DNA of 64,000 nucleotides from Macrostomum lignano (GCA_002269645.1 NIVC01000063.1:62001-126000); one strand, 5' to 3'; positions 23,253 to 64,000 are shown, counted from the stretch's first letter. Numbers and translations: made by a program. Notes: generated from the letters alone by a model not told the origin.

Positions 23253-26200
23253 ATTCTCTCCCCTCTCTTCTCTCCCCTCTATTCTCTCCCCTCTCTTCTC
23301 TCCCCTCTATTCTCTCCCCTCTCTTCTCTCCCCTCTATTCTCCCCTCTCTTCTCTCCCCTCTCTCCCCTCTATTCTCTCCCCTCTCTCCCCTCTCTTCTC
23401 TCCCCTCTATTCTCTCCCCTCTATTCTCTCCCCTCTCTCCCCTCTCTTTTCTCCCCTCTCTTCACTCCCCTCTCTTCTCTCCCCTTTATTCTCTCCCCTC
23501 TCTCCTCCCCTCCTCTCCAGGTGCCCCCTGTGTCAATCTCATTTTGTAATCTTATTCTGTAAATGAGTGTAAACCCGCACATTTTTTGCGCGTTTTTCCT
23601 CGCGATACTTCATTCACATTGGCAATTGACGCATTCTCTGTGTCCAGAGTGGCGCACAGCACATAGTGAGTTTACGATACTCTTAGAATTTTCAACAAGT
23701 TAGCTTATCCGCAAAACAGCTTTATTTACCATTTTATTGACCAAAAAGAGACGAGAAAGTTCTCCTTTATAATTCTCTCTTCCTGTGTCCTCAAGGCATG
23801 GTTCGATAAGCTGGCCAACTCGAATTGAATCTTCATCTGTGTTTACCTGGCCAGCATCCGACCCATTAGTCACCTGCGCTCATTAAGAGAATTCTAATTT
23901 TCTTGTTCTTCCGCTTTTCAGTTGCTTAGCGGCGCAGTATAACTGAAACTGAGAGCTGAGATAAGCAGCTTGCAAAACAGCGATGCTGAAACACTGGTAT
24001 CGGGTTTCTTTTAGGAGTCACGGGAGAGAGAGAACAGACAGGCCATTTCTGTTACAGGGTCAATGGAATTCGGCTCTTAAATAGCTTTGTAGCCTTGTAG
24101 TTCCCTACCTGCAAAGATGGGGAAAAGGATGGTGAAGATGAGGTAATGATGAAGAATAGGGAGAAGAATGGGGGGAGGATGAGGAGGAGGATGAGGAGTA
24201 TTGGGGAGGAGAATGGGGAAGATGTGGGAAGGATGGAAAATAGAGAGGAGGATGGGAGAAGGATGGGAAGGAGGATGGGGAGGAAGATAGGGAGAAGGAT
24301 AAGGAGAAGGATGGGATGAAGATGGGAAGGAGGATGGAGAGGAAGATAGGGAGAAGGATAAGGAGAAGGATGGGATGAAGATGGGAAGGAGGATGAGGAG
24401 GAGGATAGGGAGAAGGATGGGGAGGGGGATGGGGAGGAGGATGGGGAGGAGGATGGGGAGGAGGATGGGGATGAAGATGGGAATGAGGATGGGAAGGAGG
24501 ATGGGGAGGAGGATAGGGAGGAGGATAGGGAGGAGGATGGGGAGGAAGATGGGGAGGAGGATGGGGAGGAGGATGGGGAGGAGGATGGGGAGGAAGATGG
24601 GGAGGAGGATGGGGAGGAGGATAGGGAGGAGGATAGGGAGGAGGATGGGGAGGAAGATGGGGAGGAGGATGGGGAGGAGGATAGGGAGGAGGATAGGGAG
24701 GAGGATGGGGAGGAGGATGGGGAGGAGGATAGGGAGGAGGATAGGGAGGAGGATGGGGAGAGGATGGGGATGAAGATGGGAATGAGGATGGGGAGGAAGA
24801 TGGGAATGAGGATGGGAAGGAGGATGGGGAGGAGGATGGGAAGGAAGATGGGGAGGAGGATGGGGACAATGGGGAGGAGAGTCAAGTATAAATTAAGCAA
24901 GGAAGCAGATAAGAAATCAAACAGGGAAGCAGAGCGGGAATGAGCCAGAAAATCAGACATCTTGAACACCGTCGCTCCCCAGGGCTTCGTCGGTGTCCTG
25001 GGCTTGCACGCGGCCATGTTCTACTGGGACCAGTGCTTCCTGACCGACTTCGCCTCGGCGACCATCGAGGACGCGGCGCTGGCCGCCCTGTTCCTACTGC
25101 GCGACCGGTTCATGTCCGCCCAGGACTACCCGCAGATGAAGTCGGTCTTTCTCAACGGGCCGCGCGAGATTTATACGGCCGATTTCATCCGGGCCTGGTG
25201 CCACCTGCAGGATCGCGGCGATCCCAGCCTGGTGCCGGAAATGAACCGGCGCAAGCTGGAGGAGCCGCCGCCGCCGGACCCGGAAGTCGGCTCCCCGACG
25301 CCCGTGCCGGCGACGCCGCTGCAGCCGATTCCGCTGCCGGGACTCTGGATCGACTTGGTGTCGCTGAAGCTGCAGCTGATGAAGGACGGGGCTAGACAGG
25401 TACTTACTGGGCTGGTTGCTGTGAGGAATCTCATTTTCGATACATATCGGTAGTCTACCAGCATACAATGGTTGCTAAAACAAAACTACGATACATATCG
25501 GTATAGATAGATAGATAGATAGATAAGTCTACCAGCATACAATTGTTGCTAAAACAAAACTACGATACATATCGGTAGTCTACCAGCATACAATTGTTGT
25601 TAAAAAAACTTCGATACATATAGGTAGTCTACCAGCATGTAATTGTTGCTAAAACAAAACTTCGATACATATCGGTAGTATAACAACATGCAATTGTTGC
25701 TAAAAAAAGCTTCGATACATATCGGTAGTCTAACAACATGCAATTGTTGCTAAAACAAAGCTTCGATACATATCAATAGTCTACCAGAATACAATTGTTG
25801 CTAAAACAAATTTTCGATATCGGTATGCTCCACTTGCAAAAGCGGTCCCACTGATAAAATCAATGTGCATGTAGGTAAAAACCGTCCTTTGAAGTTTACC
25901 GCTCTTTTCTCAACTTCATTTTTTGTATGAGAAATAATTTAATAATCGATTGCACCTGCCCCAACTGGGCCAGATGTGCAACCGACAGCTCAGCCGCAGC
26001 TATTGCGCGGCGCATCTGAAGGCTGCGTACGGCTGTTTGGACGCCACACGCCCTCAATTATCCCAGCTAATGCTGGCACCCATTTTACAGCTGGGTGAAC
26101 TGAAGCAATGCAGAGTTAAGTGTCTTGCTCAAGAACACACATTTTTCAGTGGGATCAGGAATCGAACCCCCGACCTTCAAATCATGAGTCCGACGCTCTA

Positions 26201-29200
26201 ACCACTAGGCTAGAACCCTCTCTTGTATGAAAAATAAAATGAAAGAAATGAATATATTGGTGTCCTTGAGCTAGTCAAGGTCAACGATTAATATAAATAT
26301 TAGAGCAGTTTATTAAAACTTCTTCGGTTTAGTTTCAAATTCTATTAGCGGCGTTTGTATTTTTTCCCGCATATTATATCCAATCCATTGAAGTTAAGAA
26401 CAGAAAAGGAAATAACTGGTCTGCACTTGACACAAAATAGTTTAACAAGGTTTACAATAAAAAGTGTGTACTTTTTTCTGAAGATAAAAAAATTAAGGTT
26501 CTTTCTAATTTTTTTTTAAGAAAAGTGTTCTTTCCTAAAGCAAATTCTTGGTTCCTGATTAGTCTCCATCAACACCTCAAATCTATGAAAACTAAAAATT
26601 AGAAAGCTAAAAAACCACTCAACTCAGCCCCTGACCAGCTTGACCCACTCAGCCCCTGACCAGTCTGACCCACTCAGCCCCTGACCAGCTTGACCCACTC
26701 ACACCCTGACCAGCTTGACCCACTCAGCCCCTGACCAGCTTGACCCACTCAGCCCCTGACCAGCTTGACCCACTCAGCCCCTGACCATTCTGACCCACTC
26801 AGCCCCTGACCAGCTTGACCCACTTACACCCTGACCAGCTTGACCCACTCAGCCCCTGACCAGTCTGACCCACTCAGCCCCTGACCAGCTTGACCCACTC
26901 ACACCCTGACCAGCTTGACCCACTCAGCCCCTGACCAGCTTGACCCACTCACACCCTGACCAGCTTGACCCACTCACACCCTGACCAGCTTGACCCACTC
27001 ACACCCTGACCAGCTTGACCAACTCAGCCCCTGACCAGTCTGACTCACTCAGCCCCTGACTAGCCTGACTCACTCAGCCCCTGACTAGCCTGACTCACTC
27101 AGCCCCTGACTAGCCTGACTCACTCAGCCCCTGACTAGCCTGACCCACTCAGCCCCTGACCAGCTTGACCCACTCAGCCCCTTACCAGTCTGACCCACTC
27201 AGCCCCTGACCAGCTTGACCCACTCAGCCCCTGACCAGCCTGACCCACTCAGCCCCTGACCAGCTTGACCCACTCAGCCCCTGACCAGCTTGACCCACTC
27301 AGCCCCTTACCAGCTTGACCCACTCAGCCCCTGACCAGCTTGACCCACTCAGCCCCTGACCAGCTTGACCCACTCAGCCCCTGACCAGCCTGACCCACTC
27401 AGCCCCTGACCAGCTTGACCCACTCAGCCCCTGACCAGCTTGACCCACTCAGCCCCTGACCAGCCTGACCCACTCACACCCTGACCAGCTTGACCCACTC
27501 ACACCCTGACCAGCCTGACCCACTCACACCCTGACCAGCTTGACCCACTCACACCCTGACCAGCTTGACTCACTCAGCCCCTGACCAGCTTGACCCACTC
27601 ACACCCTGACCAGCCTGACCCACTCACACCCTGACCAGCTTGACCCACTCACACCCTGACCAGCCTGACCCACTCACACCCTGACCAGCTTGACCCACTC
27701 ACACCCTGACCAGCTTGACTCACTCAGCCCCTGACCAGCTTGACCCACTCACACCCTGACCAGCTTGACCCACTCACACCCTGACCAGCTTGACCCACTC
27801 AGCCCCTGACCAGCCTGACCCACTCAGCCCCTGACCAGCTTGACCCACTCAGCCCCTGACCAGCTTGACCCACTCAGCCCCTGACCAGTCTGACCCACTC
27901 AGCCCCTGACCAGCTTGACCCAGTCCGGGCTGCTCTTGATTTCCGGGTCTACCGGAGCGTCGGCGAACTGCAGCAGGCGGCAGGCGGCCAGCCGGCTGTT
28001 GTACAGAGCGCTGCGGCACCTGCTGCCGCCCAGGGAGGCTCTGATCAGACAGGCTTTCAGCGAGTCCACCGGCTGCAGCTCCTTGTGGCAGTAGTACGTG
28101 TCGTTCCGGGTTCTCTTGAACTCAATTGGAGTCCAGTAGCCGGCCGACTTGTTGGCGGCAGGCGGCTTCACGAACTGGCAGACGAAGCCGAGCAAATGGC
28201 TGCAGGCTCTGTCGCCGAGGCCCCGATTCGTTGCAAAACGAATGCAGTTCTGCTGATAGCCGTCGCTTGGCTCACCACAGCACCAGAGCGAGTCATTTCT
28301 AGGAAACTCGCCGCCGCCGTTGACTCTCTGCCAGCCTGTCCTGTTCTTTCCAACTTCGTAGCCCAGATCGGTGAGTCCAGTCCACATGTCAACCGTGATG
28401 TTGTCAACCAGATTCGAGGCAAGCAGCGCAACGATGGACTCCGGCGAGCTGATAAGTTCTCCGCCCAGCTCATCGCACCTTCGGTTGGCGGAGCACCAGC
28501 TGTAGCTCTCGCTGGACTCGATGAGCAGGCACAGCTGGGTGGCTGAGTGCAGCTGGAACGGAGCTGGGCAGTTCTGGTCAGACATCACCGGGCCGATTGT
28601 CAGCAAGAAAACTGCGGACCAGATCGCAGACAGCACAGTCAGATGCATGGATATGCTTGGGATAGGATGCAGCACTTTTTTAGCGGAGTCGGAAATCTTC
28701 TGAGAGCGCCTAAGGTCCTCTCTCTGTGGAGCGCAGGCTCTCAATTAAAAATTGTTTGAGAAATTCTTTCCGGAGAAGAGGAACATAGCTTTCGTTGCTA
28801 TTGGTAACAGGTAAACAGAGCTTTCAGGGGAATGCAGTTTCTGAATAGAGCGGCAAACTTTATTCCATAGCGGGCTCTATGCGAGGATGAAGCAGGCACA
28901 TAGCGACAGAGGTTGGTGGGGGCTAGGAGAAGTTAGCACAGGACCCAGCTATAGTCGCGGTTTTCCTCAACTGCCTTGGCCTTTCCAATTAAGGCGTCCC
29001 TCTGCCAGGCTGCTTGCATCATGCAGTACTTGTAGCTCCAAACCAGCTCTCAATTTCTAACTTCCTTAACGTATTCATATGTGGTTAGCCTTTTTTATCA
29101 GGCACTTTCAGTTTAAGCGACATTGTCACACAACCGGCGATAGGCATTGCTGCCCATTCCGCCGACTCCCCTGAGCAGGCACACAAGCAGATGAGTACGC

Positions 29201-45909: not shown

Positions 45910-47687
45910 TTACTTTTTACCAGGCGGCTGCTGCGGCTGGGAGGCGGCGCTCATAGCCGACCAGAGGCTGGTGGGATTAAATCCCATATTTTGTCGCATA
46001 GCCTGCTGCAGCATAGTCAAATAGTTAGCCGGCATAGTGTAGGGATAAGAGCTGGCGCTGGCGCCTCCGGCAGCCGGGTATAGCTGGGATATGGCCTGCA
46101 GCTGGGCGTGCAGGAACTGCTGGCGTTGAATCTGTTCAACAGCGGCTGCGGTGGCGGCAGCCTGAGAAGCGGCGGCGGCAGCGGCGGCCTGCTGCTGCTG
46201 CTGCTGCTGAGTGGTGGCAGCAAGGCGGCTGGCACTGGAGCCCGAGAGGCTGTGCAACGAACTGGATGACCTGTGCGCAGAGCTTAGCGAAGACATGCCA
46301 TGCAGAGAATGATGCTGCTGCTGGTGATGATGCTGCTGCTGATGCTGCTGAGCCTGAGGCTGAGGCGGCGGCGGAAGCAGATGCGGAAAAGCTTGAGCAG
46401 CCAGCTGCGGATTAGCCGAATAGCGTTTGAATTCTTTTTCAATTTCTTCCTCTTGTTTGAGCGCTTTAACAAAAGCGGCCTTGAGCCTGGCCGTGTGATC
46501 CTTGCGAATGGCGTTCTTCTGATTGACGGACACGCACTGTTCGCAGATGACATTCTTAGAGCCGGGCTTGTCCCGCTTCCACACAGGTGTATAGTCTGTG
46601 CCGCACTGCACACAGGTGAACGGGTGGAATACGTACTTGACTTCGGTTGGCTTGCCGCCCTTCAGTACGGCATCGTATTCGCTGATATTGCGGACAACTT
46701 CCTCTAGGCCTACTAGAGCAATGAACTCGTTAGTAACCGTGCTCGGTATGAAGTTCAACTCAGACGGCGGCGGCTGGGGATTGGGAATCTCCAGCAGGGA
46801 TTTCTCCAACTGTTTGCGCAACGCCAGCTTCTTCTGAGCCTTCTGGGCGTCTAGCTGAGCCTGGCTAATCTGTGGCGGCGGCGGCGGCGTAGCTTTCGTA
46901 GTGGAAGCCTGGCCGCTGCTGACGCTGGCCGACGTTTTCATTGGCAGCGCGGCGGCCGACTGCGACCGGCCAATTGCCGAAGATGGCGACTGATGATGCG
47001 ACAGCTTCTGGCTGCCGACAGCCGCTGCGCCAGCGGAACGGCCTTGAGCTGCAGCTGAGGCGCCCGACCGACTGGCACCAGATTGAGTGGCTCCAGCGAC
47101 GGCGCCATTCTCCTTCTGTTGCTGATGATGGAGACTGGAGCCGGGCGCCGAGGCGGATCTCTGCTGAGAATGGCGCATAGCCTTCAATAGGGCCAGTTTG
47201 CACTCTTCGCTGCGCAGACTTTCGCGTAGTTTACGCAGCACCACGGCCTGCTCCTTCACCAGGGCCATGGCGGCGTCTGAATCAATGTCAGATTCGGCTA
47301 GCTCAGCCTGCTTAGCAACTAGCTTCTGGATTTCCTGCTCTTCATCGTCTGGCAGCACAATGATCTCATCGCTGCCAGCAGTTGCAGCGCTAGCAGCAGC
47401 GGGGGCAGAAGCAGCAAGGCTGCCAGTTCCACCAGAACTTGTCAGGGCGGGCGCTTTCTTTCGGCTAAGATCCATGGGCGCCAAGCCGACTTGAGAAGAA
47501 GACTCAGTAGAGTTAGACGAAGCAGCAGCAGCAGCAGCAGCAGCCGCTTTCGAACGTTTCAACAGCACATCGGAGGTCTCGGGCAGTAGCCGTTTCCGTT
47601 GTTGCTGAGCAGCGGGCTGCATTGCTTTAATAGTTTTAGCTGTTGCTACTAATGCTGATTCTGTTGAACACTTCTTGATTGGCGACA
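45910..47687 (-). CDS. GATAD2: Transcriptional repressor p66 / GATAD2 orthologue (NuRD subunit), large coding exon
   Basis: CR1 coiled coil LRKLRESLRSEECKLALLKAMRHSQ. CR2 with KLALRKQLEKSLLEIP, EFIALVGLEEVV, C-X2-C-X19-C-X2-C and HTARLKAAFVKALKQEEEIE. The exon is preceded by branch/acceptor CTGACTAAT..TTTCAG|TG (phase 1), so the true start lies upstream or is the internal Met (MQPAA). Confidence 0.93.
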
Positions 47688-47849
47688 CTGAAATGTTGAA
47701 TTAGTCAGATAACACGGGCGCTAATTACAGGGAAATAATTAAACTCTGGCCATAGACAATTAGACTCTGTGTATACAGTACATAGAACTGCTAGCAGTAC
47801 AAAATAAATGAATTTTAATAAGCAAACTTATGACAGTCCCTAACCAATC

Positions 47850-48200: not shown

Positions 48201-48527
48201 TTACAATGATTTCGATTTACCAATCTCGCTAACCAAATCATTGTACTCTTTTAGACGCAGATGCCCATTGCCGATTTTATCCGGACTAGTCCAGGAGAAC
48301 AGCCAAGGCGCATAGTCCACGTGATTCGGATCGTTAACCGGGGCCCCGGTTAAAAAGTGACAATCGCACACCCGCGAATTCGGATTGGGCTGCCACGGCT
48401 CGCCGCGGCGCAGCGCCACTATCCATTTCTGTCGCCTGGCCGGCGGTCCAACCGGTATGCGAAACATTTTCGGCATACCGGCACCGCCGCCCCTGCGTTT
48501 ACAGTTGACTACGCAACAGCTGGGCAT
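48201..48527 (-). CDS. THAP-type (C2CH) zinc-finger ORF; possibly exon 1 (48527-48221) of the GATAD2 gene
   Basis: MPSCCVVNC...FRIP...RRQKWIVALRR..WQP...RVCDCHF..G......HVDYAPWLF contains the conserved C, C, P, W, C, H, F residues and an AVPT-like box. Confidence 0.85.
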   Translation of the reverse strand: MPSCCVVNCKRRGGGAGMPKMFRIPVGPPARRQKWIVALRRGEPWQPNPNSRVCDCHFLTGAPVNDPNHVDYAPWLFSWTSPDKIGNGHLRLKEYNDLVSEIGKSKSL

Positions 48528-49231
48528 GCCGCGGGAATATTGTATTGAGACCACAGAGCACCCTGGCTGCGACAGGTAGCCCAGGTTGAAATAATGGAGG
48601 CACAGGGCCAGATCATGATGGAGAGGAGAGAAGTAAAGAGGGGGAGGCAGACAGTCACACTAAGGGAAGAAGAGGGAAGAGACAAGCCATCTACCACCCC
48701 CCATAGGCGTCCGTCCGGTTTTTTTCAAAGCTAAAATTTCTCGTCCCTCTGCATCCAAGGTGAGTCTGACACTGCTTCTGCCAGCGAAGCTCTCTACTCG
48801 GTGAGCACACGCCATGAAGCCTCCCTCCCCTTCTCACCTTCCCCAGGTCTGCTCTCCCCTCCTTTCCCGGCTCAAACCCACATATCCTGCCCAATTTCTC
48901 TGTATCATCTGGCTCAATCTCTTGCCTGCCTATCACCTGTGTCCCGGCTCCAATTGATTTTTTTTGCAAACCGTAGACCACCTACCTCACTTTCTAGCCA
49001 GATATTCTCAGGACTAGCAATAGGGGAAGAGGAAAGACAGGAAAAATACTATAATCCTCTTTCCTATTTTTCACTGTCAATGCCAAAACAGGAGGAATAG
49101 GAAAGGACAGGGATAGCTTTTAAAGTTATACAAAGCCCCAGCAAGAGACATCTGGATTCTGAACAAAACAAAGAAACGACTGGGATTCTTCAGTGGAAGC
49201 TTTTAGAAAACTCCCTACCATGCTTGGGCGC

Positions 49232-49379
49232 AACCTAGGGATTCACCCGGCCGTTTCTATTGGCAACACACACATGTAAGTCGCTATTGGACGGAATAGT
49301 ACTCACGTGACTGCTCTTAGCTAATAGCGACTTACATGTGCGCGTTGCCATTAGAAACGGCCAGGTGATTCCCAAGGTT
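49232..49379. mobile_element. Short foldback element / MITE with ~59-bp imperfect inverted arms and a 30-bp spacer
   Basis: Left arm AACCTAGGGATTCACCCGGCCGTTTCTATTGGCAACACACACATGTAAGTCGCTATTGG pairs with the right arm at 49321-49379. Confidence 0.75.
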
Positions 49380-50099
49380 AGGGTTAGGAGTCCCTACTTA
49401 CAGAAAACAAACTGAAACTGGCAAGACGGACTATTCTTGGGGCAGTAATTGCTAACATTATTCACTGGATGCGGGCTTAACAGTAAATGATGATATTAAC
49501 ACAACCACAATGAGGACGCAACACAAAGAATTTAAGACATGAAGGAAAGACAGACTAGACAAGAGTATGACAAAATCCAACCCTTCCACCCTATCTTTTT
49601 ATAAAGTAATTGGAAGAGAAAGTAGAAATAGTTTAAACGATTGTTAGTAGAAACCAGAAAAATTGTTAGTAGAAAAGAACTCTTTTAAGCTACTGAGCTT
49701 AAGCTACTAATCGTCTTCAAATTTGACGCAAACAATCTTCAACTATTTTAAGACAATCGTGTAAAATTTCGAGGCTTAAAGTTAATTCTGAACGGCACTG
49801 TGTACTTTTAAAGTTAGTCTGATTTTGTCAGCGTAGCAACCACCTCAACCTCCGCCTCTCTCCTTGCCTTATTTGGCGAGATATGGAAAAGGAGTTTTAA
49901 AATTGACTAAACTTTGGCGCTGCTATAAGTTTGCTTCACATAAATGATTGACTTCAAACTTGACAAAATACTTCATTGACTCATTCACTGTCATATCTCT
50001 AAATGTAAAGTCTCAGCTCTGTAACTCTGTTTTTTGCCTAGATGTTTTTGCCGCTCATTCATTCCCCCAAGAGGAAGGGGTCGGGCGATAGGGCTCAGT

Positions 50100-53000
50100 G
50101 AACATAGATGTGCTGTGTTGTGGAATAACTTTAGTTATATAGCCTTCTTTGCAAGAGACTATGTTTAGCCATGACAGTTTAGTGAGAAATTCTTAACACT
50201 TGGCCTATTCTATAAAGCCACCATAAGATAAGTTTGTTCTTAGCTCCTATCTCCACAGTGTAAAAGTTCCAACGTACAATTGAACTTATGCTACAACAGC
50301 TTTATAGTACAACTACAACCCCTCTGTACTACTATCTGATTGAGAGACAAGAGTATTCTGTGCCACAAACTGGCTTTTGAAGCAACTTCAGCTCACACTA
50401 AAGGATCTGCACTGAAAAAAATATCTTAACATTAATAAGTATTATCCTGATACTCTATTTTAAATTTTCACAACATTCTAATCATCAATCATATGAACTT
50501 TTAAATGATGTCAGAACACAAAGGCTTAGGGACATGGCTTTTAAGGTTGTAAATATACTTAAAGACATGGCAAATTATAACAGTCAATACTTAATACTAA
50601 GTGGCATTGCATTTCTTATATCTTTAACTTACCTGACATAATTGTATAAAAATGTGCATCTTAAAGAGTATCTTGAAAGACACTGAAAACTTTTAAATTT
50701 AGTGTATTTTTGCCATTGAGACAACCACTGTAATCTCCATCTACCTCTTTTTCCCTTATCTGGCCAGATATATACACAAGGGTTTTAAAATTGACTAACT
50801 TATGGCTACCATAACATGCATGCACAACACCCCACTAAGCTAGCCAATCTAGCTGGCTGGCAAAGAGCCTAGCCAAGGTAAGTTGCATAAATGCCCATTC
50901 AAAAATTATAGTCATGATACTAATTAGATGATAAGGCAGGCATTTAGCCTTAATAATACAGTTAGTTACTCTTGTCATTTACTCAAATTAGCATAATTTT
51001 TGCTTAGGTATCTTTCATAGGTAATTTGCATTTTTGGTCAAAATGTAAGATGCATAGCTAGTATATAACTCAGAGGGAGTGCTCATGTATCTGTAAGTTT
51101 ATTCCATATAAAACAATTAGCCTTAAACTTGATATAATTCTTTATTAACTTATTATCTATCTAAGTATAAAATCTTACTCTAATTTAATTAAAATTAGGC
51201 GCACAATTGGTTACAAGAAAAAGAGCACAAATGGGCAATCACTCTAATCAGGAGGTGGCAAATTGTACAAATATATTATAAAATGTAAATTTATAAAGCA
51301 CACAAGATGCCCATATTGTGGATTGTGTTATATATATGCCAGAAAGTATCTGACTATCTAGTAAAGTGCACGCCAATAAAGTATGCCAATTAAGATAGTC
51401 TTCTAATTCTAGTAAATTGTATGCCAATTAAAAATGTGTGATTAACAAGCAAAAAATCTAACAATCAAGCTTAGGCATAGCAAATAATTTACAATAAAAA
51501 ATTAAATTGAAAACATATATCATTTGAAAAAATGAAAAGAATTGGTAAAACAGAATAGTTACATTTATTATTGATTAAGGTATATTTCTGAAAGAAAGAA
51601 AGAAAAAAACTTTCTATAGTTTTCTTTCTTCTTTCTTTCTATAGTTTTCAAACAATATACTAAAACTATAGAAAGTTTTAGTATATTGTTTGAAAATCTA
51701 ATTTATTGTCATGACTTTGCAAATTAACTCTATAGCAAAGATTGTTTAGCATAATTCATATAATTCAATGCTTTTGTACACTGCATCAAAAGCTTGAACA
51801 AGTATAGTTAAGAATTATAAGCTAATGATTGTGCTTGAAGGTTGTATTTCCTCCTTCAATGCCAAATAAATGCTAGATAAAGCACTTGAACGCCAGATGT
51901 ATGCTAGCTAAAGTGTTTGTATGCCAGAATTTTCTGGTATATACTATACTTTCTGCAATATGGTAAAGATGCTAATGCAGGGGCATAAGTGCCCATTGCT
52001 ATTATACATCTACATACTTACACTGACATTATACGCATAAGATGCATAGCGCATGCTGCGTATATACCATGCACCTTATGCGCAAATAGAAATTTCTTTC
52101 TCTGTAGCCATGCAGGCAATTTTTCACAAGCATACCAGATACTATTTGTAAAAAACCCTATTTGCTCCAATGGGAATCTTAGTCAACCTAGTAGAAAAGA
52201 CTATAATCTACTTTAGTAAGACACTAGTAATAGCTATAATTGTGGTAACAAACTAGATTCATAACTATTAATTTAATAATAAATACATCAAATACTTTAT
52301 TGCCAAAAATAGTTCCATTTTCTAAATAAATATAATTTGTTTAAACTTTCATTTTGACTTTGTAAAAAAATAAACACACACTAGGTACATTTTTATTAAA
52401 TATTGAAATAACTAATGAAAAATTAATTAGATTATATTATAATATCAAGTCACTAACTTAGAGATTCTAGTATATACAATTTTCAGTCATTATAGATAAT
52501 ATTTGGAACATATATAGTTAGAAAATAAAATGGATTGATTAAAACACTTGAATAATTTCAATATCTTATAATATATAATATAGTTTTTACATCAATCTAA
52601 ATCTTTCAATATATAAAAGTATAGGCTTATCTTAATTTTTTTCTCTTTTTTAAAAAGTTTATTTGCTTTTTTAGAATATAATTCTATAAGCATATACATG
52701 CGCAACTGCTGGCTGACCTGGCCAATCTGGCCATTGTAAATTGTGGTGGACCAGGGGAAAGTTGCAAAAATGCCCAGCCTAAATAATACAGACATAGTAC
52801 TAATTAGATAATGAGGCATTTAGCCTTTATAAGACAGTTATAGTTACTCCTGTCATTTACCTAAAATTGTATTAGGGTTTCTTTTACAGGTAAGTTGCAT
52901 TTTTGGTCGCATGGCTAGTATAAATCAGGGGGTTGCGCATGTATGTATAAGCATATTAATCATTATATGCAATTATTCTTATTTGTTACTAGTAGGCCCT

Positions 53001-56000
53001 ATCTATTACTAAAGTAGCTAATATTACCACAATAGCTATTATTGGAATGGCTATTACTAAAACAAAATGGACTAGACCTATTAATTTATAGTAGAAAAGG
53101 CTTAGTTGGAATTTTTTAAATAAACTAAGCCTATCATAGGTTATCCAACTAATATTTTGGTCCATATCTATAATACAGATATGATGATTTTTGAAAAAAA
53201 AACAATATAGTTCTATTTTTAATTAACAAACATACATGCCTAACACTCATCTGTCTTGTCCAAACTAGACAGGTGAAATGGCTGCTGGCCAAGGTAAGTC
53301 ACAAAATCAAAAACACAAAAATTTGAAGAAAGGAGAGGAAGAGAAAAGGAAAAGAAAGGAAGGAAAAGAGAGTGAGGATTGAGGAGAAAGAAGAGAGAGA
53401 AAGAGAAAAAGAAGAAAAAAGAAAAAAGCAAGAAAAGTCATATACAAAATGAAAATTAAGTCACAATTGGGGCGAACTAAATTGCAATTAAGAGGAACTG
53501 AGTTGCAAATCTGGACAAAACTAAGTTGCACCAGACAGGTGAAATTGGTATTGGACCAAGACCACCACATACCAAGACTGCTATACTTGGGGGATCTAGT
53601 AGAGAAATTTGGCTTCATGTTTTATTAGATAGTGCTAGAATTAAAAGGAGACAAATAGATAGGAAAGCCAATAAGACAAGGCTACAAGAAAGAAACTTAT
53701 TAAAGGAATTGCAATGCTAGAAAATTGGTAATTCTATCTTAATACTATACCAAAAGCCAATAATAGCTGTGGCAGTCTTAGTATGTGGCAGTTTTAGTCA
53801 TAGGCCTATGCCATAAAATTGTAAGGTTGGGCATGTATGTTAACAAAGAAAATTTACTAGAAACTTTTGCTTAATATAACTTTGTATTGATTTAATAGTG
53901 CAATTTATTTTTAATTAGTTTCTATTTGGTTTAATGATAAATAAGTAAGTCTATTACATCTGTCCTATTATATTACCTAGGCCTAGGCTTAATAGAGGTT
54001 AGACAATATCTCATAGGCCTATATTTATAAGATTTTTTAGTCTTAAGATCTATACTTTTAAAATAATAGAGATTCAATTAATATTCAAGTTAAGTTTAAT
54101 TGGGATCTAGCCATTTAATAAGCCTTCTTACATTATTCTATCTTATTTAGCTTAGTAGGCCCTACTAATAATAGATATTATTATTTATTTATTAAATATA
54201 CATAATGATAATAGGCCTAATAGAGGAAAAAACAATTAATACATAATATTAAGCTTGTTAGTAACTTGACATATATCAAATATAAATAATATGATGAAAT
54301 AATATTAATATTAATATCATCTCATCATAGTCAACATTAGTCACATCACATAGTCCTAGATTTTGAGATCTCAAAACCAAGATCAAGATTGAGAAAAGTG
54401 CCAAGATCTTGTCTTAACAATTGAGATCAAGATTGAGATCTGGTTTAACCCCTACTGACTAGTCTGGGTTTACCCACCAGATTGATAGTCAGACTGTGCT
54501 AGAGACAAATCTTTCAAGCCATACCATTCTGCGCCCATTTTAATTAGATTTCTAAGAAAATAAGTAAAATTTTAAAATGTGCAACAGTAAAAGATCGCTA
54601 TTTTTGTTACTACTACTACTGGGCCTACTCATCTCAAGCTTAACTCAAATAAGTAATATGCTAGACTCGTTAGGACTCTACGACTACATGGTACAATTTT
54701 AAGCCACGTCTTATTGGGTCAGCCCCCCTAGCCACATCTAAAAAAGATAGGCCTAAGCAGACAAATTTTCAAAACACGACTCTATTGAAGGCGGATATTG
54801 AAGATTTTCTATAAGAAACAACTTTGCTGCATCTAGTCGTAGTTACAGAAGCGATCAAAATCCATCTAAAATGTAATCTAGACTCTAGACTAAATTCAAG
54901 ATCTAAACAAGACGAAAAGTACAAAATCAAGTCCTAGACTAGGTCAAGGTGTCAAACAGACAAAACTAACTTCACATGACAGTGTTGAATATAGACCTAC
55001 TGGTACTTTTTTGTGCCTCGCTTTTGTCAATAGGTGATATCTACTTTTAGCTGAGGTAGGTGTAAGATGATATACCAAAACTAATTAATATAATTTCATA
55101 ACTAATACACGTTTTAAAATTATGCTGAAATACTTTTGTTCAAATAAAAGCATGAATGCTGGGTAAAACAAAGTAGAAACTTTTCTTTAAAGGTAATTTG
55201 TGATGCATATTGTTTTTTGTTTTGTTTCTTTTTTTAAAACATTAATTATTAAAGCAGTTGCATTTTATTAAAAACGAAAAAATAAACATTTTCACATTTG
55301 TATTAGCGTCATGGAACTTTTAATCGTTTAAAATCAAGGCACTTTTACGATTTTATCGAAAATCAATTCTTAATCTTAGCTTAGCTAATTACTATCTGAC
55401 TAAATTACAAGGAAAAAACCTACATATTTTTAAAAAAATTCTTGTATGGTTAATTCTATATGTCTGTTTAAAAGCTTATTTCATTTACATGCACCACAGT
55501 AGCTAGTGACTAGTGTTGTCAGTTGTCTACAACATAAACGACTACCCGTCCCTGGGCTGTTGCTGCTGTATGGTGTTCTGTACCCAGAATGGTTTTATAA
55601 AAAAACCACTTGACACAGCTTCAATGTGTTTTACTTGCTCGTAACTAGACCTAATTTGATATGATAGGCCTGTAGGCTAGGCTATGAGTATGTATGTCAT
55701 CAATTAATATAACTTTAAACTTTTTAATCATTTATTAGGTGCACTTTGTATTTATTATACAATTTAGTCTAAGTATGGTTTTATGTTATGTTTTTTAATT
55801 AATAATTAGTATATTACTTTTTTATTCATATTATAAGCTATAATTATCTTATAATTTAATACTTATACTTATAGACCTATTTGTATTAATTTAATTTTTA
55901 AAATGACTATAGCTAAATAGAGAACAAGAGTGAGAATGCAAGAGCTAATGCTCAAACCAAGGTATAAAAACCCTTAGCAAGTAGAAGAGGAGGGCTATTG

Positions 56001-57280
56001 TAAACAAAAGAATAGAAAGAATATAATGCACATTCCCCACAAATACCATTTATTTACAAAAGTGCAAAAGTATACCCTCTAGTAGAGCCTCGTAGGGTAA
56101 CTAAAGCTTGTTTGCAAATTGGTCATTGGTGCGCCTTAATGCAAACTGAGGCATCTATAGCTTTTTTCTAAGAATAAGAACATTGAAAAATATAATTAAA
56201 AATACCAATTATGTATGCATCTTAGACAAAACTTAAGGTTTAGATTGAAATGAATACAATATATTATTGAATAACTAAAGAGTGATTATAGGAAGTATTT
56301 TACTTTTACTTTATTAAAACAACTTTTTTCCATTTTTCTTTTTCTAGAATATATAAGTAATTTAGTTTAGGGGTTTTTATAATTTAATTTTTTGATTTAG
56401 ATGATAAATCATTAGGGGCAAAAAGACAAAAAGTTTATGTCTATATTTTAGAAAAAAATATCTTAATTGTATTTTTATAGGTCTTTAATTATAGGTTTTC
56501 TAGAAAGAAAAAGCTAACCCCTTCTTTTTTCTTTATAATTAAAAATAAAATTATTTTTAAAGTATATAGTATAATATATCAAAGAAATTATCTAATCAGT
56601 TTATTGATACAAAAACAAAGCAATAATTTAATAAAGATTAAAGAAGAAGATTGAAGGTTCAATTCCCAATTCTATTAGAACAATTTATGTCCTTGAGCAA
56701 GACATTTCACAATAATTTACTCTACATTGCTTTAGTTCACCTAACTATAAAATGGGTAACAATATTAGCTAGGATAATTGAGGATATATGGGCACCCTAT
56801 AGTCCCTAGACTAAACAGCCATATGCAGCCTTCCTATGCACTACTCAATAACTGTAGCTAAACTATTAATTGCATATCTGGCCTAATTACATATCCACTT
56901 GTAAAAGCAGAGTTGATTAAGCACAAGCATAGCTTATTGTAAATCTTAAATAATAATCAATAAGGATTAATTTAATAGCAAGAAATCATCTATGCATGAT
57001 TGAACTTGATGCTTCCTTTTTTCTTATCTACTACATGCTTGTTTCATATGCTAAGAATAAAATGCTTAATAAGTCTATCTGAACTGCCAGCCATAGGCCA
57101 TGCACATGTCAAGTAATTGAAGAAATTATTATTATATATGAATTTTCAAGCAAGCCACCTCACCTTGCTGTATTGGCCCAATTTGCAGAAATACTGTGCT
57201 TAAATCTTGAACGTGGAACTTGTAGTGTGAGAAACCTGTCACCTGCACACTTGGCCCCCCCCATACTCACCCTCCCTTAC
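50100..57280. other. AT/TpA-rich, CpG-depleted intergenic domain of decayed repeats (C>T/G>A hypermutated)
   Basis: Near absence of CpG over kilobases (except ~54500-55400), abundant TAG/CTA/TAGGCCTA, and the directional SINE comparison described in the findings. Confidence 0.7.
56650..56890 (+). mobile_element. Decayed copy B of the CORE-type SINE
   Basis: B-box remnant GGTTCAATTCCC; CTTGAGCAAGACA...CTATAAAATGGG aligns to copy A over ~150 nt. Confidence 0.85.
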
Positions 57281-57333
57281 TGGCATTATCGAATCTCTTT
57301 AAATCGGCGCCCACTCTGCTAAAACCAGCTGCA

Positions 57334-58801
57334 ATGGCTGACGAGGCCGGGCCAAGCGAGAAGGCCAAGTTTACTAAAGACACCGAGGAAGTGGACATCG
57401 ATCCAATTAGCGGAAAACGTCGAGTAGAAGGCGGCGGTGGCCGTCAAGGACGCCGACTGACACTATTCGATCGTTCCTCTGGTTCGGTTTTGAATCCCTG
57501 CTTTGCATCGAGCGTGCTGGAGGCTCACTATCAGAGAATCAGCTACCAGCAGTCGGTGGGCAGGCTGAGATGTGCCTGCGCCTACCTGGCCCTGTGCTCT
57601 CTGGTCTGGCTTATCTATTTTGCTATTCGCCAAACTCCAATGTGGTGGGGTTTGGTGCTAACTGAGGTCGCTACTATTCTCGTCTTTGTCCTACTACTTG
57701 GAGCTACTTACGTTCGAGCGCTATTTCCGCGATTTTCTCTTGTATTGTCGCTGATTGCCGTGGTGGTTAAAGGCGGCCTACTACTGGCCAATATGGCCGC
57801 TTTGAAAGGCGATGAGGACTATGGATATTTGCCGATTTTCGATTTTGCCGGAGTTTTACAGGTGAGGCTGGACATAGACTTACAGTCTATGACAGACGAT
57901 TGCAATCTCCATTCATTATTACCGTGAAGACGAGGAATGCCCTTGAAAACAAATAGATGTCTATTTAGAATGACCTTGAAAACCATTAGGCTTCCATTTA
58001 GAATGACCTTGAAAACAAATGGGTTTCCGATTTAAATGACCTTGAAAACAATTAGATTTCCATTTAGAAGGACCTTGAAAACCATTAGGCTTCCGTTTAG
58101 AATGACCTTGAAAACAAATGGGCTTCCGTTTAGAATGACCTTGAAAACAAATGGGCTTCCATTTAGAATGACCTTGAACACAAATGGATTTTTAATTTAA
58201 AATGACCTTTAAATCACATTTTCCATTTAAATGCCCTTAAAAACAAATATATGTCTATTTAGGATGACCTTGAAAACCATTAGGCTTCCATTTAGAATGA
58301 CCTTGAAAAATAAAACAAATGGGTTTCCGATTTAAATGACCTTGAAAACAATTAGCTTTCCATTTAGAATGACCTCGAAACCATTAGGCTTCCGTTTAGA
58401 ATGACCTTGAACAAAAATGGATTTTTAATTTACAATGACCTTTAAATCACTTAAATGACCTTAAATTTTCCATTTAAATGACCTTGAAAACAAATGGAAT
58501 TTTCTCTTGGAATGGCCTTGGAAAGACGAAAAGGATTTCCTCTCGCAAGAGCTATCTATATTCGAAAAAAATTCAACCTTTTAACTTGCGATTTCAACTC
58601 CAACAGGTGGTAATGGTATCGTACACCCTGATACCAATACCCTTGTACCTTTGCCTTCTTTACGGCATACTGCTGAGCGGCTTGTACATACTCTGCCTAG
58701 TGTTCTTCATTGGAGTTGAGACGCCACTGATTCTAACTTCTCACGCTATGATGCTAATTGGAGTGCAAATTGTTGGATTTCAGTTGCACATTATGTCGCA
58801 G
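57334..58801 (+). CDS. ADCY9: Adenylate cyclase type 9-like, first two coding exons (57334-57861, 58607-58801); 3' exons not found in the window
   Basis: LFDRSSGSVLNPCFASSVLEAHY..RLRCACAYL..LVWLIYFA resembles the AC9 N-terminus/TM1. Exon 2 YTLIPIPLYL..GFQLHIMSQ resembles the end of the AC9 M1 region. Phase-0 CAG|GTGAG donors on both exons. Confidence 0.8.
57938..58505. repeat. ~33-bp degenerate minisatellite AATGACCTTGAAAACAAATGGGCTTCCATTTAG
   Basis: In ADCY9 intron 1. Confidence 0.9.
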
Positions 58802-58904
58802 GTGAGTTTTAATTCTGTAAATTTAAACTGACTGATGAGAGTTCTGCGACTGTAGTTTGCATTTACTATGTACTATACAGGGAGGTTGTGTCTAGGGTAA
58901 GTGC

Positions 58905-59232
58905 TACTGTGTCTATAGATATTGAGGGCCAGTGTATTCTATTGATATTGGATGTCAGGCTGTCAGTGTGTCTATAGATATTGAAGGCCAGTGTATCTAT
59001 AGATATTGAAGGCCAGTGTGTCTATATATATTGGAGGCCAGTGTATCTATAGATATTGTAGGCCAGTGTGTCTATAGATATTGAAGGCCAGTGTGTCTAT
59101 ATATATTGTAGGCCAGTGTGTCTATATATATTGAAGGCCAGTGTGTCTATGTATATTGGAGGCCAATGTGTCTATATACGAGTATATTGAGGGTCAGTGT
59201 GTCTATATATATTGGAGGCCAGTGTGTCTATA
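58905..59232. repeat. 25-bp minisatellite CCAGTGTGTCTATAGATATTGAAGG
   Basis: In the ADCY9 intron after exon 2. Confidence 0.9.
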
Positions 59233-59919
59233 TAGAAGTCCTTTTGCTCACAATATAAGTTTTTCTGCGTGTGGGAGTTTTTATTTGAAGAAGATAGTTG
59301 CTTTTTCCACTTTATATTGTTTAATTAACATTATAGAATTCATTATTGAGTTTATTTCATCATCATTGATTTCTACTTAACTAAGTGTTGATGCCAATCC
59401 TGTTATCCAGATTGCATTGTACCCTGATAAATTAATAATAAGAGCTGAGGTCACTAGTTGTGTATACAAGAATATACATATTGTACAGAGAGCATCGCAC
59501 AAACTGAATAATGCATAGTTAATCATCTGTGTACTCACAGACAGTGTGTGGACTTGGGCTTGCAAGCTTATAAGTATAGACAATTGTGTGTTGGGGACAC
59601 GGTCAGCAGATCTGCCTTTCAATCTGCCTTTCTGTCTAAAAAGAGAGAAATTCTGTCTTTTCTGTCTGTCTCTCTTAGTCCTTGACTCGTGTTGTCCTTC
59701 AGCTGGGCCACGCTTGATTCCTGTATGAAATCTATTAATTACTTCACCCAACGTTTGGCTTGGGCACGAGTCGATTTTAAGGACACAGTAGGAATTGCAC
59801 TAAATAAGTTGCTGATTGAGTGCTAATGTCTTAGGCAGTGGCAGCAATTAATATGTATCGCTTAGTAGCAATGGCAAGAATTGGAGGAGTAAACTACACG
59901 GGTGCGGGGGAGAGGAAGT

Positions 59920-61745: not shown

Positions 61746-62374
61746 ATAGAGAGAGGGGGGGGGTGAGTAAGGAAAAGGTGAGGAGTAGGGAGAAAAAATA
61801 TGTGAGTCTTAATTTTTAGCTAACCGTTACCAAGATTTTAATAGTTGCATCACAGTTTATAATTATTTAATTAAAATAGAAATCCTCTAAGCATGTGTTG
61901 CAATATTAGCCTGCAGCATCTGTGCCTATATTTATAAACCTCTCGCGCACCCCAGAGAGCGTGAAAAATGCTATACTGCTAAGCTAGTACAAAGTCTGCC
62001 AGATTAATATTAGCCTTCAGGCAGAACCTGCGGAGACTGAATATATTGGTCCTGGCATTCGCTCCCTACCAACTTTCTCTCTCAGTAGTTCGGCTTTCTG
62101 CCTTCCCGGGGCGAAATCGGATTTTCCAACCGTGCACTTTTGGTGCTCCTCTAGGGAGGACCCCTGAGGGCTGAAAGAATTTACGACCAACCAGCCGTAT
62201 TTTCGCTCCTTGTTCCGCTACTCTCCCCTCCCATTCATTCTTTGTCACGTTTCAAGGACTTTTAAAAAAACGGAATCTGGAATGGAAGGCGCAAATATTT
62301 ATTTGTTTGTGTTTCTTAAACTTTATTAAGTCAAAAGTCAAAGTTTATTCGGCTTAAACTTTGACGGTTTGAAT

Positions 62375-63525: not shown

Positions 63526-64000
63526 AGTGACTCGACTGACTCTGTGCTTTCTGGTTTCCAATATTTCAGTCCTATCGATAAACTTATAGTCAGTTAATAA
63601 TTTACAAAAAGAATTTGAAAATGTGCCACAGCGATTTAGCGGGGTGAAGTCTCCATTTTTTCAGGCTTGGAAAAGATTCTATTGACTAAACCTAATCCAG
63701 AAAAATGCCCCAGTTTCTAATCCAGATTTCTATCCAGACAGGCGTCCATGGTCACACACTTCCTGTCCTTGGATGACTGATTCAGTATATTAAGCAAAAC
63801 GCGGGCTCTTAAGTCCGGGAATTTCTTAAGCCTAATTTGCAGCTGCAACTGCCTATATTTTCTTTCTCCAGCTCTTTCTAGTATCGTGTTTCTATGCTTG
63901 AATATGTTTTCTGAGCCAACAGGATTTATAATTTATTTTGTGGAATAAATGATGCTTAAATATGCTAGACTTACAGGCTCCAGAACTGTTTGACTCCTTT

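What the first reader, a model, noticed from the sequence alone, without database searches (positions are those of the whole stretch)
50100..57280. RIP-like, double-stranded C>T hypermutation domain in an animal genome
Seen in sequence: SINE copy B (56650-56890) aligns to intact copy A (minus strand of 25940-26212). In two ungapped blocks totalling ~150 nt I counted by hand 35 differences. Of these, 31 are C>T or G>A from A to B, 4 are transversions, and none is T>C or A>G. Contexts: 11 CpG, 13 CpA/TpG, 5 CpT/ApG, 2 CpC/GpG. Example: CCCAGCTGTAAAATGGGTGCCAGCATTAGCTGGG becomes CCTAACTATAAAATGGGTAACAATATTAGCTAGG. Several CG become TA, implying two successive hits. C>T and G>A are interleaved in one copy, so both strands were targeted. 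The surrounding ~7 kb is TpA-rich and almost CpG-free. Established knowledge: ordinary 5mCpG decay hits mainly CpG; fungal RIP (RID/Masc1 family) gives CpA>TpA on both strands; APOBEC-type editing of retro-intermediates is typically strand-coordinated. Inference: a region-restricted cytosine modification/deamination process (non-CpG methylation or RIP-like) has acted here. CpG-rich tandem arrays elsewhere in the window (10648, 13687) and SINE copy A are untouched, so position rather than repetitiveness appears to be the trigger. The domain ends within a few hundred bp of the ADCY9 start codon.
Basis: partly seen in the sequence, partly recalled or inferred. Interest (0 to 1): 0.88.

Follow-up and report, generated by a model that had tools for sequence, protein, structure and literature searches.

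The report
AT-rich block with regional cytosine decay
A 7-kb stretch just upstream of a gene's first coding exon in a marine-invertebrate-type (spiralian) genome has lost its cytosines by C-to-T change several times faster than the rest of the window, which looks like a long-standing methylated compartment rather than a fungal-style repeat-killing system.

Summary
SINE B (56646-56889) differs from intact SINE A (26230-25930, minus strand) by 51 substitutions in 216 aligned columns. Forty are G>A or C>T, two are T>C, none is A>G, and nine are transversions. G>A and C>T are interleaved, and all 11 CpGs of A are lost in B.

The surrounding block (50091-57210) has GC 0.30, CpG o/e 0.22 and TpA o/e 1.0. 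Non-tandem background has GC 0.43, CpG o/e 0.80 and TpA o/e 0.78. The block borders are sharp.

Three new tests support a position effect:
- A second repeat pair straddles the left border. Transitions run 36:16 towards AT in the inside copy (P=0.008), while transversions are symmetric.
- Rare variants in 21 tandem arrays outside the block give a per-site GC>AT:AT>GC transition ratio of only 1.9, with no CpG or CpA effect. In B the ratio is about 17.
- Applying B's spectrum to background sequence reproduces the block's GC, CpG and TpA values.

The RIP-like label is not supported. Copy A is untouched, unique DNA in the block is affected, CpG is hit hardest, and the CpA-depletion index is normal.

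The likeliest cause is a persistent germline-methylated compartment with spill-over to CpA. The evidence rests on two repeat pairs in one window, and the species' genome was not available. "ADCY9" was not confirmed.

The parts
50091..54500 (.). Core 1 of the AT-rich, CpG-exhausted block
   Evidence: GC 0.30, 12 CpG in 4.4 kb (o/e 0.12), TpA o/e 1.02, no strand skew. The left border follows from CpG positions: 26 CpG in 49200-50090, then 4 CpG in the next 1.9 kb.
54501..55650 (.). CpG-retaining island inside the block
   Evidence: GC 0.32 but 20 CpG (o/e 0.67) and TpA o/e 0.89. It is either a later insertion or an unmethylated patch. No terminal repeats or coding remnant were found.
55651..57210 (.). 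Core 2 of the block, containing SINE B
   Evidence: GC 0.27, 2 CpG in 1.56 kb (o/e 0.07). There is no CpG between 56132 and 57212, followed by 42 CpG in the next 720 bp.
56646..56889 (+). SINE copy B, decayed (homology probably extends to about 56920)
   Evidence: 68% identical to A in four letters and 86.5% in purine/pyrimidine space. nhmmer E=2.3e-24. 40 of 51 substitutions are GC>AT transitions.
25930..26222 (-). SINE copy A, intact reference copy outside the block
   Evidence: tRNA-like head (Rfam RF00005, 29.1 bits). About 15-nt target-site duplications ATTT(T/C)TCATACAA flank it. GC is 0.54 over the aligned part, with 11 CpG retained.
49735..49992 (+). Old duplicated segment, copy 1, just outside the left border (CpG-replete)
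   Evidence: Matches 50620-50830 and 51077-51161 at 84-89% in purine/pyrimidine space (187 and 104 bits, above the shuffle null of 81-100). Keeps 7 CpG.
50620..51161 (+). Copy 2 of the same segment inside the block, interrupted at 50814-51040 by another repeat
   Evidence: No CpG is left. Relative to copy 1 there are 36 GC>AT transitions against 16 in reverse (P=0.008), and transversions are 7:6.
52692..52909 (+). In-block repeat, partner of 50814-51040
   Evidence: 75% identical. Differences are symmetric (11 vs 15 transitions, 24 transversions), as expected when both copies lie inside the block.
57334..57861 (+).
   Evidence: ORF starting at ATG 57334. Segment 57211-57930 has CpG o/e 0.89. 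Only a faint Pfam AC_N match, E=0.28, and no database homologues.
48250..48765 (+). CpG-island-like region with a consensus splice donor, possibly the promoter and non-coding exon 1 of the downstream gene
   Evidence: Dense CpG at 48250-48560 and CCAAG|GTGAGT at 48759/48760. A polypyrimidine tract plus CAG lies just before the ATG at 57334. Sequence reading only; no RNA evidence.

Best explanation
The block (50.09-57.21 kb) is a long-standing chromatin compartment defined by position. It probably lies in intron 1 or the upstream spacer of the downstream gene.

Inside it, cytosines on both strands are converted to thymine several-fold faster than elsewhere in the same window. Per-cytosine loss in SINE B is 59% at CpG, 39% at CpA and about 21% at CpC and CpT. 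A/T sites changed by only about 5%.

The most likely cause is germline DNA methylation of this compartment in a mosaically methylated spiralian genome. Deamination of 5-methylcytosine would act at CpG and, more weakly, at CpA (non-CpG methylation as a by-product of de novo methyltransferase activity). Easier strand opening in DNA that is already AT-rich may reinforce it.

Any GC-rich sequence that lands in the block, such as SINE B, is driven towards the block's composition. The process depends on position, not on repetition, and it is gradual rather than a burst.

What is shown: the directional spectrum, its contexts, its restriction to the block, and its quantitative fit to the block's composition. 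What is inferred: methylation as the chemical cause, and the intron-1 position.
For: - Directional spectrum in SINE B against A: 40 GC>AT transitions vs 2 AT>GC, interleaved on both strands.
- A second repeat pair across the left border: 36 vs 16 transitions towards AT in the inside copy (P=0.008), transversions 7:6, with the excess at CpA (17/32 vs 3/28) and CpG (5/14).
- CpR against CpY contexts, both pairs combined: 50/106 vs 26/103, P=0.0015.
- Baseline outside the block from 21 arrays: per-site ratio 1.9, no CpG hypermutability (0.71% vs 0.83%), and flat C>T rates across contexts. This means the outside is unmethylated and its mutation bias cannot produce B (P=3.5e-5, 2e-5, 3e-5).
- B's spectrum applied to background sequence gives GC 0.29, CpG o/e 0.30, TpA o/e 0.99 and TpA/ApT 1.12. 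The block shows 0.30, 0.22, 1.01 and 1.09.
- CpG o/e falls from 0.74 to 0.09 across about 200 bp on the left and rises from 0.07 to 0.89 on the right. This is the classic footprint of a methylated compartment next to an unmethylated one.
- Non-tandem DNA downstream of the exon is also CpG-depleted (o/e 0.44-0.73), against roughly 0.8-1.0 upstream of 48 kb. That fits a methylated transcription unit.
- B's flanks are already at GC 0.20, so the regime predates B.
- Mosaic methylation of gene bodies, and in some species of transposons, is documented in annelids, molluscs and cnidarians (PMC11292947, PMC4378273, PMC8857917).
- The dependence of CpG deamination on local GC content through DNA melting is discussed in PMC2265638.
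- The neighbouring gene encodes p66/GATAD2 with its MBD2-interaction coil. This is weakly consistent with a working 5mC-reading system.
Against: - No methylation data exist for this organism.
- Two thirds of the changes in B (27 of 40) are at non-CpG sites, more than CpG methylation alone explains. Appreciable CpA methylation has not been established for spiralian germlines (my knowledge).
- The block-wide trinucleotide census shows strong NCG loss but no clear NCA loss, and (CpA+TpG)/(ApC+GpT) stays at 1.23 where the B-based simulation predicts 1.04.
- GpC o/e of 1.62 in the block is not reproduced by the model.
- The in-block pair 50814-51040 / 52692-52909 has ts:tv of about 1, less transition-rich than B, so the regime is not uniform in time or space.
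- The 1.15-kb island is AT-rich yet keeps its CpGs, so AT-richness and CpG loss are partly uncoupled.
- The evidence comes from two repeat pairs in one 64-kb window, and copy A is only a proxy ancestor.
- The array baseline could be distorted by intra-array conversion or assembly error.
Confidence: 0.5

Rival explanations
1. There is no regional process. B is simply an old copy, or a member of a more AT-rich subfamily, sitting in the only stretch of old, unconstrained DNA in a window otherwise made of genes and young arrays. Genome-wide AT-biased mutation plus time explains everything.
For: - The mutational equilibrium implied by the array baseline is GC about 0.34, close to the block's 0.30.
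- A and B differ by 10-, 9- and 7-bp indels, so A is not B's direct parent.
- No coding or transposon remnant is recognisable in the block, as expected for old junk.
- The rest of the window is 41% arrays plus several ORFs.
Against: - A/T sites of B are 95% conserved while 40% of G/C sites changed. With a 1.9:1 bias, B could not fall from GC 0.54 to 0.35 without saturating its A/T sites.
- The ts:tv ratio is 42:9 in B against 116:115 in the arrays (P=2e-5).
- The border-straddling pair shows the asymmetry between two copies of the same age.
- CpG hypermutability is present inside the block and absent outside.
Confidence: 0.2
2. Non-enzymatic, self-reinforcing decay. Once a stretch is AT-rich it opens more easily, so spontaneous cytosine deamination is faster in every context, most of all at weakly stacked CpA/TpG steps. 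Lack of GC-biased gene conversion lets the changes fix. No methylation is needed.
For: - C>T is raised in all four contexts in B (21-59%), against about 0.8% flat in the arrays.
- B's flanks are at GC 0.20.
- There is no strand skew.
- The link between local GC content, DNA melting and deamination rate is discussed for human CpG sites in PMC2265638.
Against: - The reported effect sizes in mammals are modest (my knowledge), whereas the excess here is at least 3-7 fold.
- CpG is specifically hit hardest, with CpG o/e falling to 0.07-0.12. Context-free deamination cannot do that, as the reasoning checked by simulation shows.
- Other AT-rich segments keep their CpGs: 38651-39364 has GC 0.29 and CpG o/e 1.3, and the island 54501-55650 keeps o/e 0.67.
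Confidence: 0.15
3. Dedicated enzymatic hypermutation. An AID/APOBEC-like deaminase, or a RID-like methylase-deaminase, is recruited to this chromatin domain and deaminates cytosines on both strands.
For: - The spectrum is transition-only, on both strands, with a CpA preference and CG>TA double hits.
- The borders are sharp.
- AID/APOBEC-like deaminases exist in invertebrates, including a brachiopod (PMC5956068, PMC5889660).
Against: - There is no TpC or CpC preference (ApC 52%, CpC 33%, TpC 32%, GpC 27%) and no strand-coordinated runs.
- Copy A is untouched and unique DNA is affected, so the trigger is not duplication.
- The RIP index (CpA+TpG)/(ApC+GpT) is not lowered (1.23).
- The flanks were already AT-rich before B decayed, which argues against a burst.
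- My literature searches found no report of RIP in animals.
Confidence: 0.1

Closest known systems
Mosaic (compartmentalised) CpG methylation of invertebrate genomes, with CpG decay in the methylated compartment (annelids, oyster, cnidarians, Ciona; PMC11292947, PMC4378273, PMC8857917, PMC3827831)
   Same: - A kilobase-scale block with CpG o/e about 0.1 abuts DNA with o/e about 0.8-1, with sharp borders.
- CpG is the most mutable context.
- The block is linked to a transcription unit and contains transposon-derived sequence.
   Different: - Two thirds of the inferred changes are at non-CpG cytosines, with a CpA preference.
- GC drops by 13 points, more than CpG decay can give.
- The coding exon next to the block is not CpG-depleted.
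- Methylation itself is untested.
Fungal repeat-induced point mutation (RIP; RID / Dim-2 dependent) and the AT-rich blocks it creates (e.g. Leptosphaeria, PMC3105345; kingdom-wide survey PMC12543289)
   Same: - C>T and G>A on both strands.
- CpA>TpA is enriched.
- TpA-rich, GC-poor blocks with sharp borders lie next to normal DNA.
   Different: - RIP is triggered by duplication and hits both copies. Here copy A is intact and unique DNA is affected.
- CpG is the top target here.
- The CpA-depletion index is normal.
- The decay looks gradual.
- No RID-type enzyme is known in animals (my knowledge).
APOBEC3-type editing of retroelement intermediates in vertebrates; AID/APOBEC-like deaminases of invertebrates (PMC5391955, PMC5956068, PMC5889660)
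   Same: Many C>T/G>A changes in one retroelement copy relative to its relatives.
   Different: - Editing of intermediates is on one strand, has a 5' TpC or CpC motif, and stops at the element's ends.
- Here both strands are hit and interleaved, there is no such motif, and the flanks are affected even more.
GC-content-dependent deamination and regional substitution bias (DNA-melting model; PMC2265638, and Fryxell & Moon 2005 as cited there)
   Same: Faster C>T in GC-poor surroundings, a local effect over a kilobase or so, and self-reinforcing.
   Different: The known effects are modest and were described mainly for methylated CpG in mammals. Here the excess is several-fold and includes CpA.

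Membership tests
Fungal-type RIP | C>T / G>A transitions on both strands dominate the differences between repeat copies | tested here: met
   40 of 51 substitutions between A and B are of this kind, and they are interleaved (runs test P=0.79).
Fungal-type RIP | Triggered by duplication: both copies of a repeat are mutated and unique DNA is spared | tested here: not met
   Copy A keeps 11 CpG, GC 0.54 and a tRNA-like head. Non-repeated flanks of B are at GC 0.20-0.35 and the whole 7 kb is affected.
Fungal-type RIP | CpA is the preferred target: (CpA+TpG)/(ApC+GpT) below about 1.03 and TpA/ApT above about 0.89 (Neurospora criteria, my knowledge) | tested here: inconclusive
   In the repeat pairs CpA is hit more than CpC or CpT (39% vs 21%; 17/32 vs 3/28), but CpG is highest at 59%. 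Block-wide, (CpA+TpG)/(ApC+GpT) is 1.23 (not met). TpA/ApT is 1.09 (met), but background is already 0.88.
Fungal-type RIP | RID/Masc1-type cytosine methyltransferase homologue in the genome | not testable with these tools
   The species' genome and proteome are not in the collections. The best relative of the neighbouring p66 gene is only 43% identical.
Methylated compartment of a mosaically methylated invertebrate genome | CpG o/e strongly depressed in a block with sharp borders against CpG-replete DNA | tested here: met
   CpG o/e is 0.12 and 0.07 in the two cores, against 0.74 (49200-50090) and 0.89 (57211-57930) on either side. Arrays outside show no CpG hypermutability.
Methylated compartment of a mosaically methylated invertebrate genome | CpG>TpG/CpA is the main mutational footprint | tested here: inconclusive
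   CpG has the highest per-site rate (13/22) and all 11 CpGs of A are lost. However, 27 of the 40 transitions are at non-CpG sites.
Methylated compartment of a mosaically methylated invertebrate genome | 5-methylcytosine actually present in germline DNA of the block | not testable with these tools
   Needs EM-seq, bisulfite or nanopore data from the organism.
Methylated compartment of a mosaically methylated invertebrate genome | Lies within a transcription unit (gene body) | tested here: inconclusive
   A consensus splice donor at 48759/48760 and an acceptor-like site before ATG 57334 would place the block in intron 1. Downstream non-tandem DNA has CpG o/e 0.44-0.73. There is no transcript evidence.
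APOBEC/AID editing of retroelement intermediates | Strand-coordinated runs of G>A or of C>T | tested here: not met
   26 G>A and 14 C>T fall in 21 runs, indistinguishable from random order.
APOBEC/AID editing of retroelement intermediates | 5' TpC or CpC (or WRC) target motif | tested here: not met
   Converted fraction by 5' neighbour: ApC 12/23, CpC 9/27, TpC 7/22, GpC 12/44.
APOBEC/AID editing of retroelement intermediates | Changes confined to the element, with flanks unaffected | tested here: not met
   The flanks are more AT-rich and CpG-poorer than B itself.

The most novel reading that the evidence does not exclude
This spiralian animal has a chromatin-targeted cytosine modification or deamination system: heavy non-CpG (CpA) methylation, or a recruited deaminase. 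It converts whole kilobase-scale domains, including any element that inserts into them, into AT-rich, TpA-rich DNA. That would be an animal counterpart of the AT-block formation known from fungal RIP, but triggered by position instead of duplication.
Probability: 0.12. Interest if true: 0.85.

Novelty: new variant of a known kind. Interest (0 to 1): 0.42.

Why it matters
If the excess C>T at non-CpG sites is real and recurs genome-wide, the local mutation spectrum in an invertebrate can differ about ten-fold between neighbouring kilobases. That would reshape base composition and erase inserted elements.

This bears on four questions:
- how AT-rich blocks and composition heterogeneity arise in animal genomes;
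- whether DNA methylation acts as a mutagenic genome defence outside vertebrates and fungi;
- how repeat ages are estimated, since a copy like B looks far older than it is;
- how to read CpG o/e maps.

If instead it is ordinary methylated-compartment decay, it is a clean textbook example but not new biology.

Tried and rejected
- **More SINE copies for a family consensus.** There are none in the window. Three pattern scans of public viral and metagenome contigs found nothing.
- **Same-species data.** The protein database holds no close relative, so a genome-wide test was impossible.
- **Further decayed repeats with partners outside the block.** I searched in purine/pyrimidine space. Two candidates (54363-54707 / 33586-33235 and 52889-53086 / 43075-43267, at 91-93 bits) fall within the shuffle null of 81-100 bits and were dropped. 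The polypurine tract at 53262-53560 matches polypurine arrays only as low complexity.
- **Decayed transposon or mitochondrial genes in the block.** These would have given protein-based polarisation.
- **Trinucleotide census of block against background, to recover the target motif.** Only NCG loss is clear.
- **Terminal repeats around the CpG-retaining island.** None were convincing.
- **tRNA and Rfam scans.** These found only the head of SINE A.
- **Considered and rejected:**
  - ADAR-type A>G editing of copy A (reverse polarity). A is the intact, CpG-rich, tRNA-like copy, and B shares its flanks' composition.
  - Transcription-coupled asymmetry. There is no strand skew; G>A and C>T total 41 vs 35 over both pairs.
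  - Nuclear mitochondrial insert. Stop-codon density is random and there are no Pfam hits.
Full report
**Observation.** They are the only copies in the window (blastn; nhmmer and purine/pyrimidine-space search).

Copy A (26222-25930, minus strand) is intact:
- tRNA-like head (Rfam tRNA, 29.1 bits);
- about 15-nt target-site duplications visible;
- GC 0.54 and 11 CpG in the part that aligns to B.

A gapped alignment and an independent MAFFT alignment agree. In 216 aligned columns there are 51 substitutions: 26 G>A, 14 C>T, 2 T>C, 0 A>G and 9 transversions, of which 6 also go from G/C to A/T. Three insertions of 7-10 bp in B show that A is a proxy for B's ancestor, not its parent.

Fractions converted, scored on A:

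| Context | Converted |
|---|---|
| CpG | 13/22 |
| CpA | 15/38 |
| CpC | 6/27 |
| CpT | 6/28 |

All 11 CpGs are lost, four of them to TpA. G>A and C>T alternate at random (runs test P=0.79).

**The block.** Per-kb profiles, TRF-masked segments, CpG positions and sub-block statistics define an AT-rich, CpG-poor block from about 50091 to 57210.

| Segment | GC | CpG o/e |
|---|---|---|
| Core 1, 50091-54500 | 0.30 | 0.12 |
| Island, 54501-55650 | 0.32 | 0.67 |
| Core 2, 55651-57210 | 0.27 | 0.07 |
| Left neighbour, 49200-50090 | 0.40 | 0.74 |
| Right neighbour, 57211-57930 | 0.51 | 0.89 |

TpA o/e is about 1.0 in the block against 0.78 in non-tandem background. There is no GC or AT skew. No protein-coding remnant is detectable in any frame.

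**Is it position-specific?** Three tests were possible inside the window.

*Test 1: a second repeat pair.* An old duplicated segment has one copy just outside the left border (49735-49992, 7 CpG kept). The other copy is 0.9 kb away, inside the block (50620-50830 plus 51077-51161, no CpG). The homology is well above a shuffle null.
- Transitions run 36:16 from G/C in the outside copy to A/T in the inside copy (binomial P=0.008).
- Transversions are symmetric, 7:6.
- The excess lies at CpA (17/32 against 3/28 in the reverse direction) and at CpG (5/14).
- A pair with both copies inside the block is symmetric, 11:15.

*Test 2: a baseline from outside the block.* The 21 tandem arrays elsewhere in the window supply a polarised baseline. 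Rare variants are scored against each array's consensus.
- GC>AT transitions: 78 per 9524 sites. AT>GC transitions: 38 per 8934 sites. The per-site ratio is 1.9.
- ts:tv is 116:115.
- CpG is not hypermutable (0.71% against 0.83%).
- C>T is flat across CpA, CpC, CpG and CpT (0.7-0.9%).

SINE B departs from this baseline in four ways:
- direction (P=3.5e-5);
- ts:tv (42:9, P=2e-5);
- non-CpG direction (27:2, P=4.5e-4);
- non-CpG C>T relative to change at A/T sites (27:5 against 72:89, P=3e-5).

A/T sites of B are 95% conserved while 40% of its G/C sites changed. A 1.9:1 bias cannot do that.

*Test 3: simulation.* Applying B's context-specific conversion fractions to the non-tandem background gives the values below.

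| Statistic | Simulated | Block |
|---|---|---|
| GC | 0.29 | 0.30 |
| CpG o/e | 0.30 | 0.22 |
| TpA o/e | 0.99 | 1.01 |
| TpA/ApT | 1.12 | 1.09 |

The whole block therefore has the composition expected if it had gone through what B went through.

**What does not fit a simple story.**
- The simulation predicts a drop of (CpA+TpG)/(ApC+GpT) to 1.04, but the block stays at 1.23.
- GpC o/e is 1.62 against a predicted 1.14.
- A trinucleotide census shows strong loss of NCG only, not of NCA.
- The in-block repeat pair has ts:tv near 1.
- The island is AT-rich yet keeps its CpGs.
- B's flanks are at GC 0.20, lower than B at 0.35. The block was therefore AT-rich before B decayed, and B is still on its way down. 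This indicates a persistent regime, not a burst.

**Setting.**
- The neighbour on the left is a single-exon p66/GATAD2 gene (45910-47688, minus strand; P66_CC and GATA domains).
- Its best relatives are only 43% identical: a nemertean, annelids and a brachiopod.
- A CpG-island-like stretch (48250-48560) is followed by a consensus splice donor at 48759/48760.
- A polypyrimidine-CAG acceptor sits just before the ATG at 57334. The block may therefore be most of intron 1 of the downstream gene.
- Non-tandem DNA further downstream is moderately CpG-depleted (o/e 0.44-0.73), unlike DNA upstream of 48 kb.
- The gene's identity as ADCY9 is not confirmed.

**Interpretation.**
- *Best-supported reading: a methylated compartment.* The block is a position-defined compartment with a persistently raised rate of cytosine-to-thymine change. 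The most likely cause is that it is methylated in the germline of a mosaically methylated genome, a pattern documented for annelids, molluscs and cnidarians (PMC11292947, PMC4378273, PMC8857917). The decay would spill over to CpA. Low local GC may reinforce it (melting model, PMC2265638).
- *"RIP-like" fails.* It fails on RIP's defining feature, dependence on duplication. It also fails on target order and on the CpA-depletion index.
- *APOBEC-type editing of retro-intermediates fails.* It fails on strand coordination, motif and confinement to the element.
- *Plain age plus general AT bias is disfavoured.* The array baseline and the border-straddling pair argue against it. It is not excluded, because the baseline is indirect and only two repeat pairs are available.
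- *A dedicated enzyme recruited to the domain cannot be excluded.* This is the most novel reading left open.

**Verdict.** The finding is a real, locally well-supported regional mutational regime. Its CpG component is ordinary. Its non-CpG component is unusual but thinly sampled. It deserves a genome-wide follow-up in the source assembly rather than a claim of a new system.

Noticed in passing
window 1-64000 (e.g. 13688-17878, 40451-42472, 59924-61738): 41% of the window (26.4 kb) is minisatellite arrays with periods of 12-51 bp, many strongly strand-skewed. Their rare variants give a local mutation baseline with ts:tv about 1, a GC>AT:AT>GC ratio of 1.9 and no CpG hypermutability.
   Followed up: yes
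window 45910-47688 (-): Single-exon ORF encoding a p66/GATAD2-type NuRD subunit (P66_CC MBD2-interaction coil plus GATA finger). Its best database relatives are only 43% identical (nemertean, annelid, brachiopod), so the source is a spiralian lineage with no close relative in the protein collection.
   Followed up: partly
window 48250-48765 and 57300-57334: A CpG-island-like stretch is followed by a consensus splice donor, CCAAG|GTGAGT, at 48759/48760. A polypyrimidine tract plus CAG lies just before ATG 57334. The AT-rich block may therefore be intron 1 of the downstream gene.
   Followed up: partly
It gives only a faint Pfam AC_N match (E=0.28, below threshold) and no homologues in the protein database, so the gene's identity is unconfirmed.
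   Followed up: partly
window 54501-55650: A 1.15-kb island inside the block is AT-rich (GC 0.32) but keeps CpG (o/e 0.67). It could be a younger insertion or an unmethylated regulatory patch.
   Followed up: partly
window 49232-49379: CpG-rich inverted repeat with 57-nt arms (89% complementary, 34-nt spacer) just outside the block. It could be MITE-like or a hairpin element.
   Followed up: no
window 27899-28744 (-); 1018-2724 (-); 39838-43251 (-): A C-type lectin ORF (Pfam Lectin_C, E=5.8e-7) and two long Thr-rich, mucin-like ORFs with a C-terminal membrane anchor, built on tandem arrays.
   Followed up: no
window 53320-53440: A-rich polypurine tract inside the block, flanked by direct repeats AGACAGGTGAAAT(T)GG at 53264 and 53530. 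It resembles the G-rich polypurine arrays elsewhere (59924-61738, 24159-24866) only at the purine/pyrimidine level. It could be a G>A-decayed array, but this cannot be shown.
   Followed up: partly
window 58447-64000 (non-tandem parts): DNA downstream of the first coding exon is moderately CpG-depleted (o/e 0.44-0.73) compared with DNA upstream of 48 kb (about 0.8-1.0). This suggests that the whole transcription unit is in a different methylation state.
   Followed up: partly
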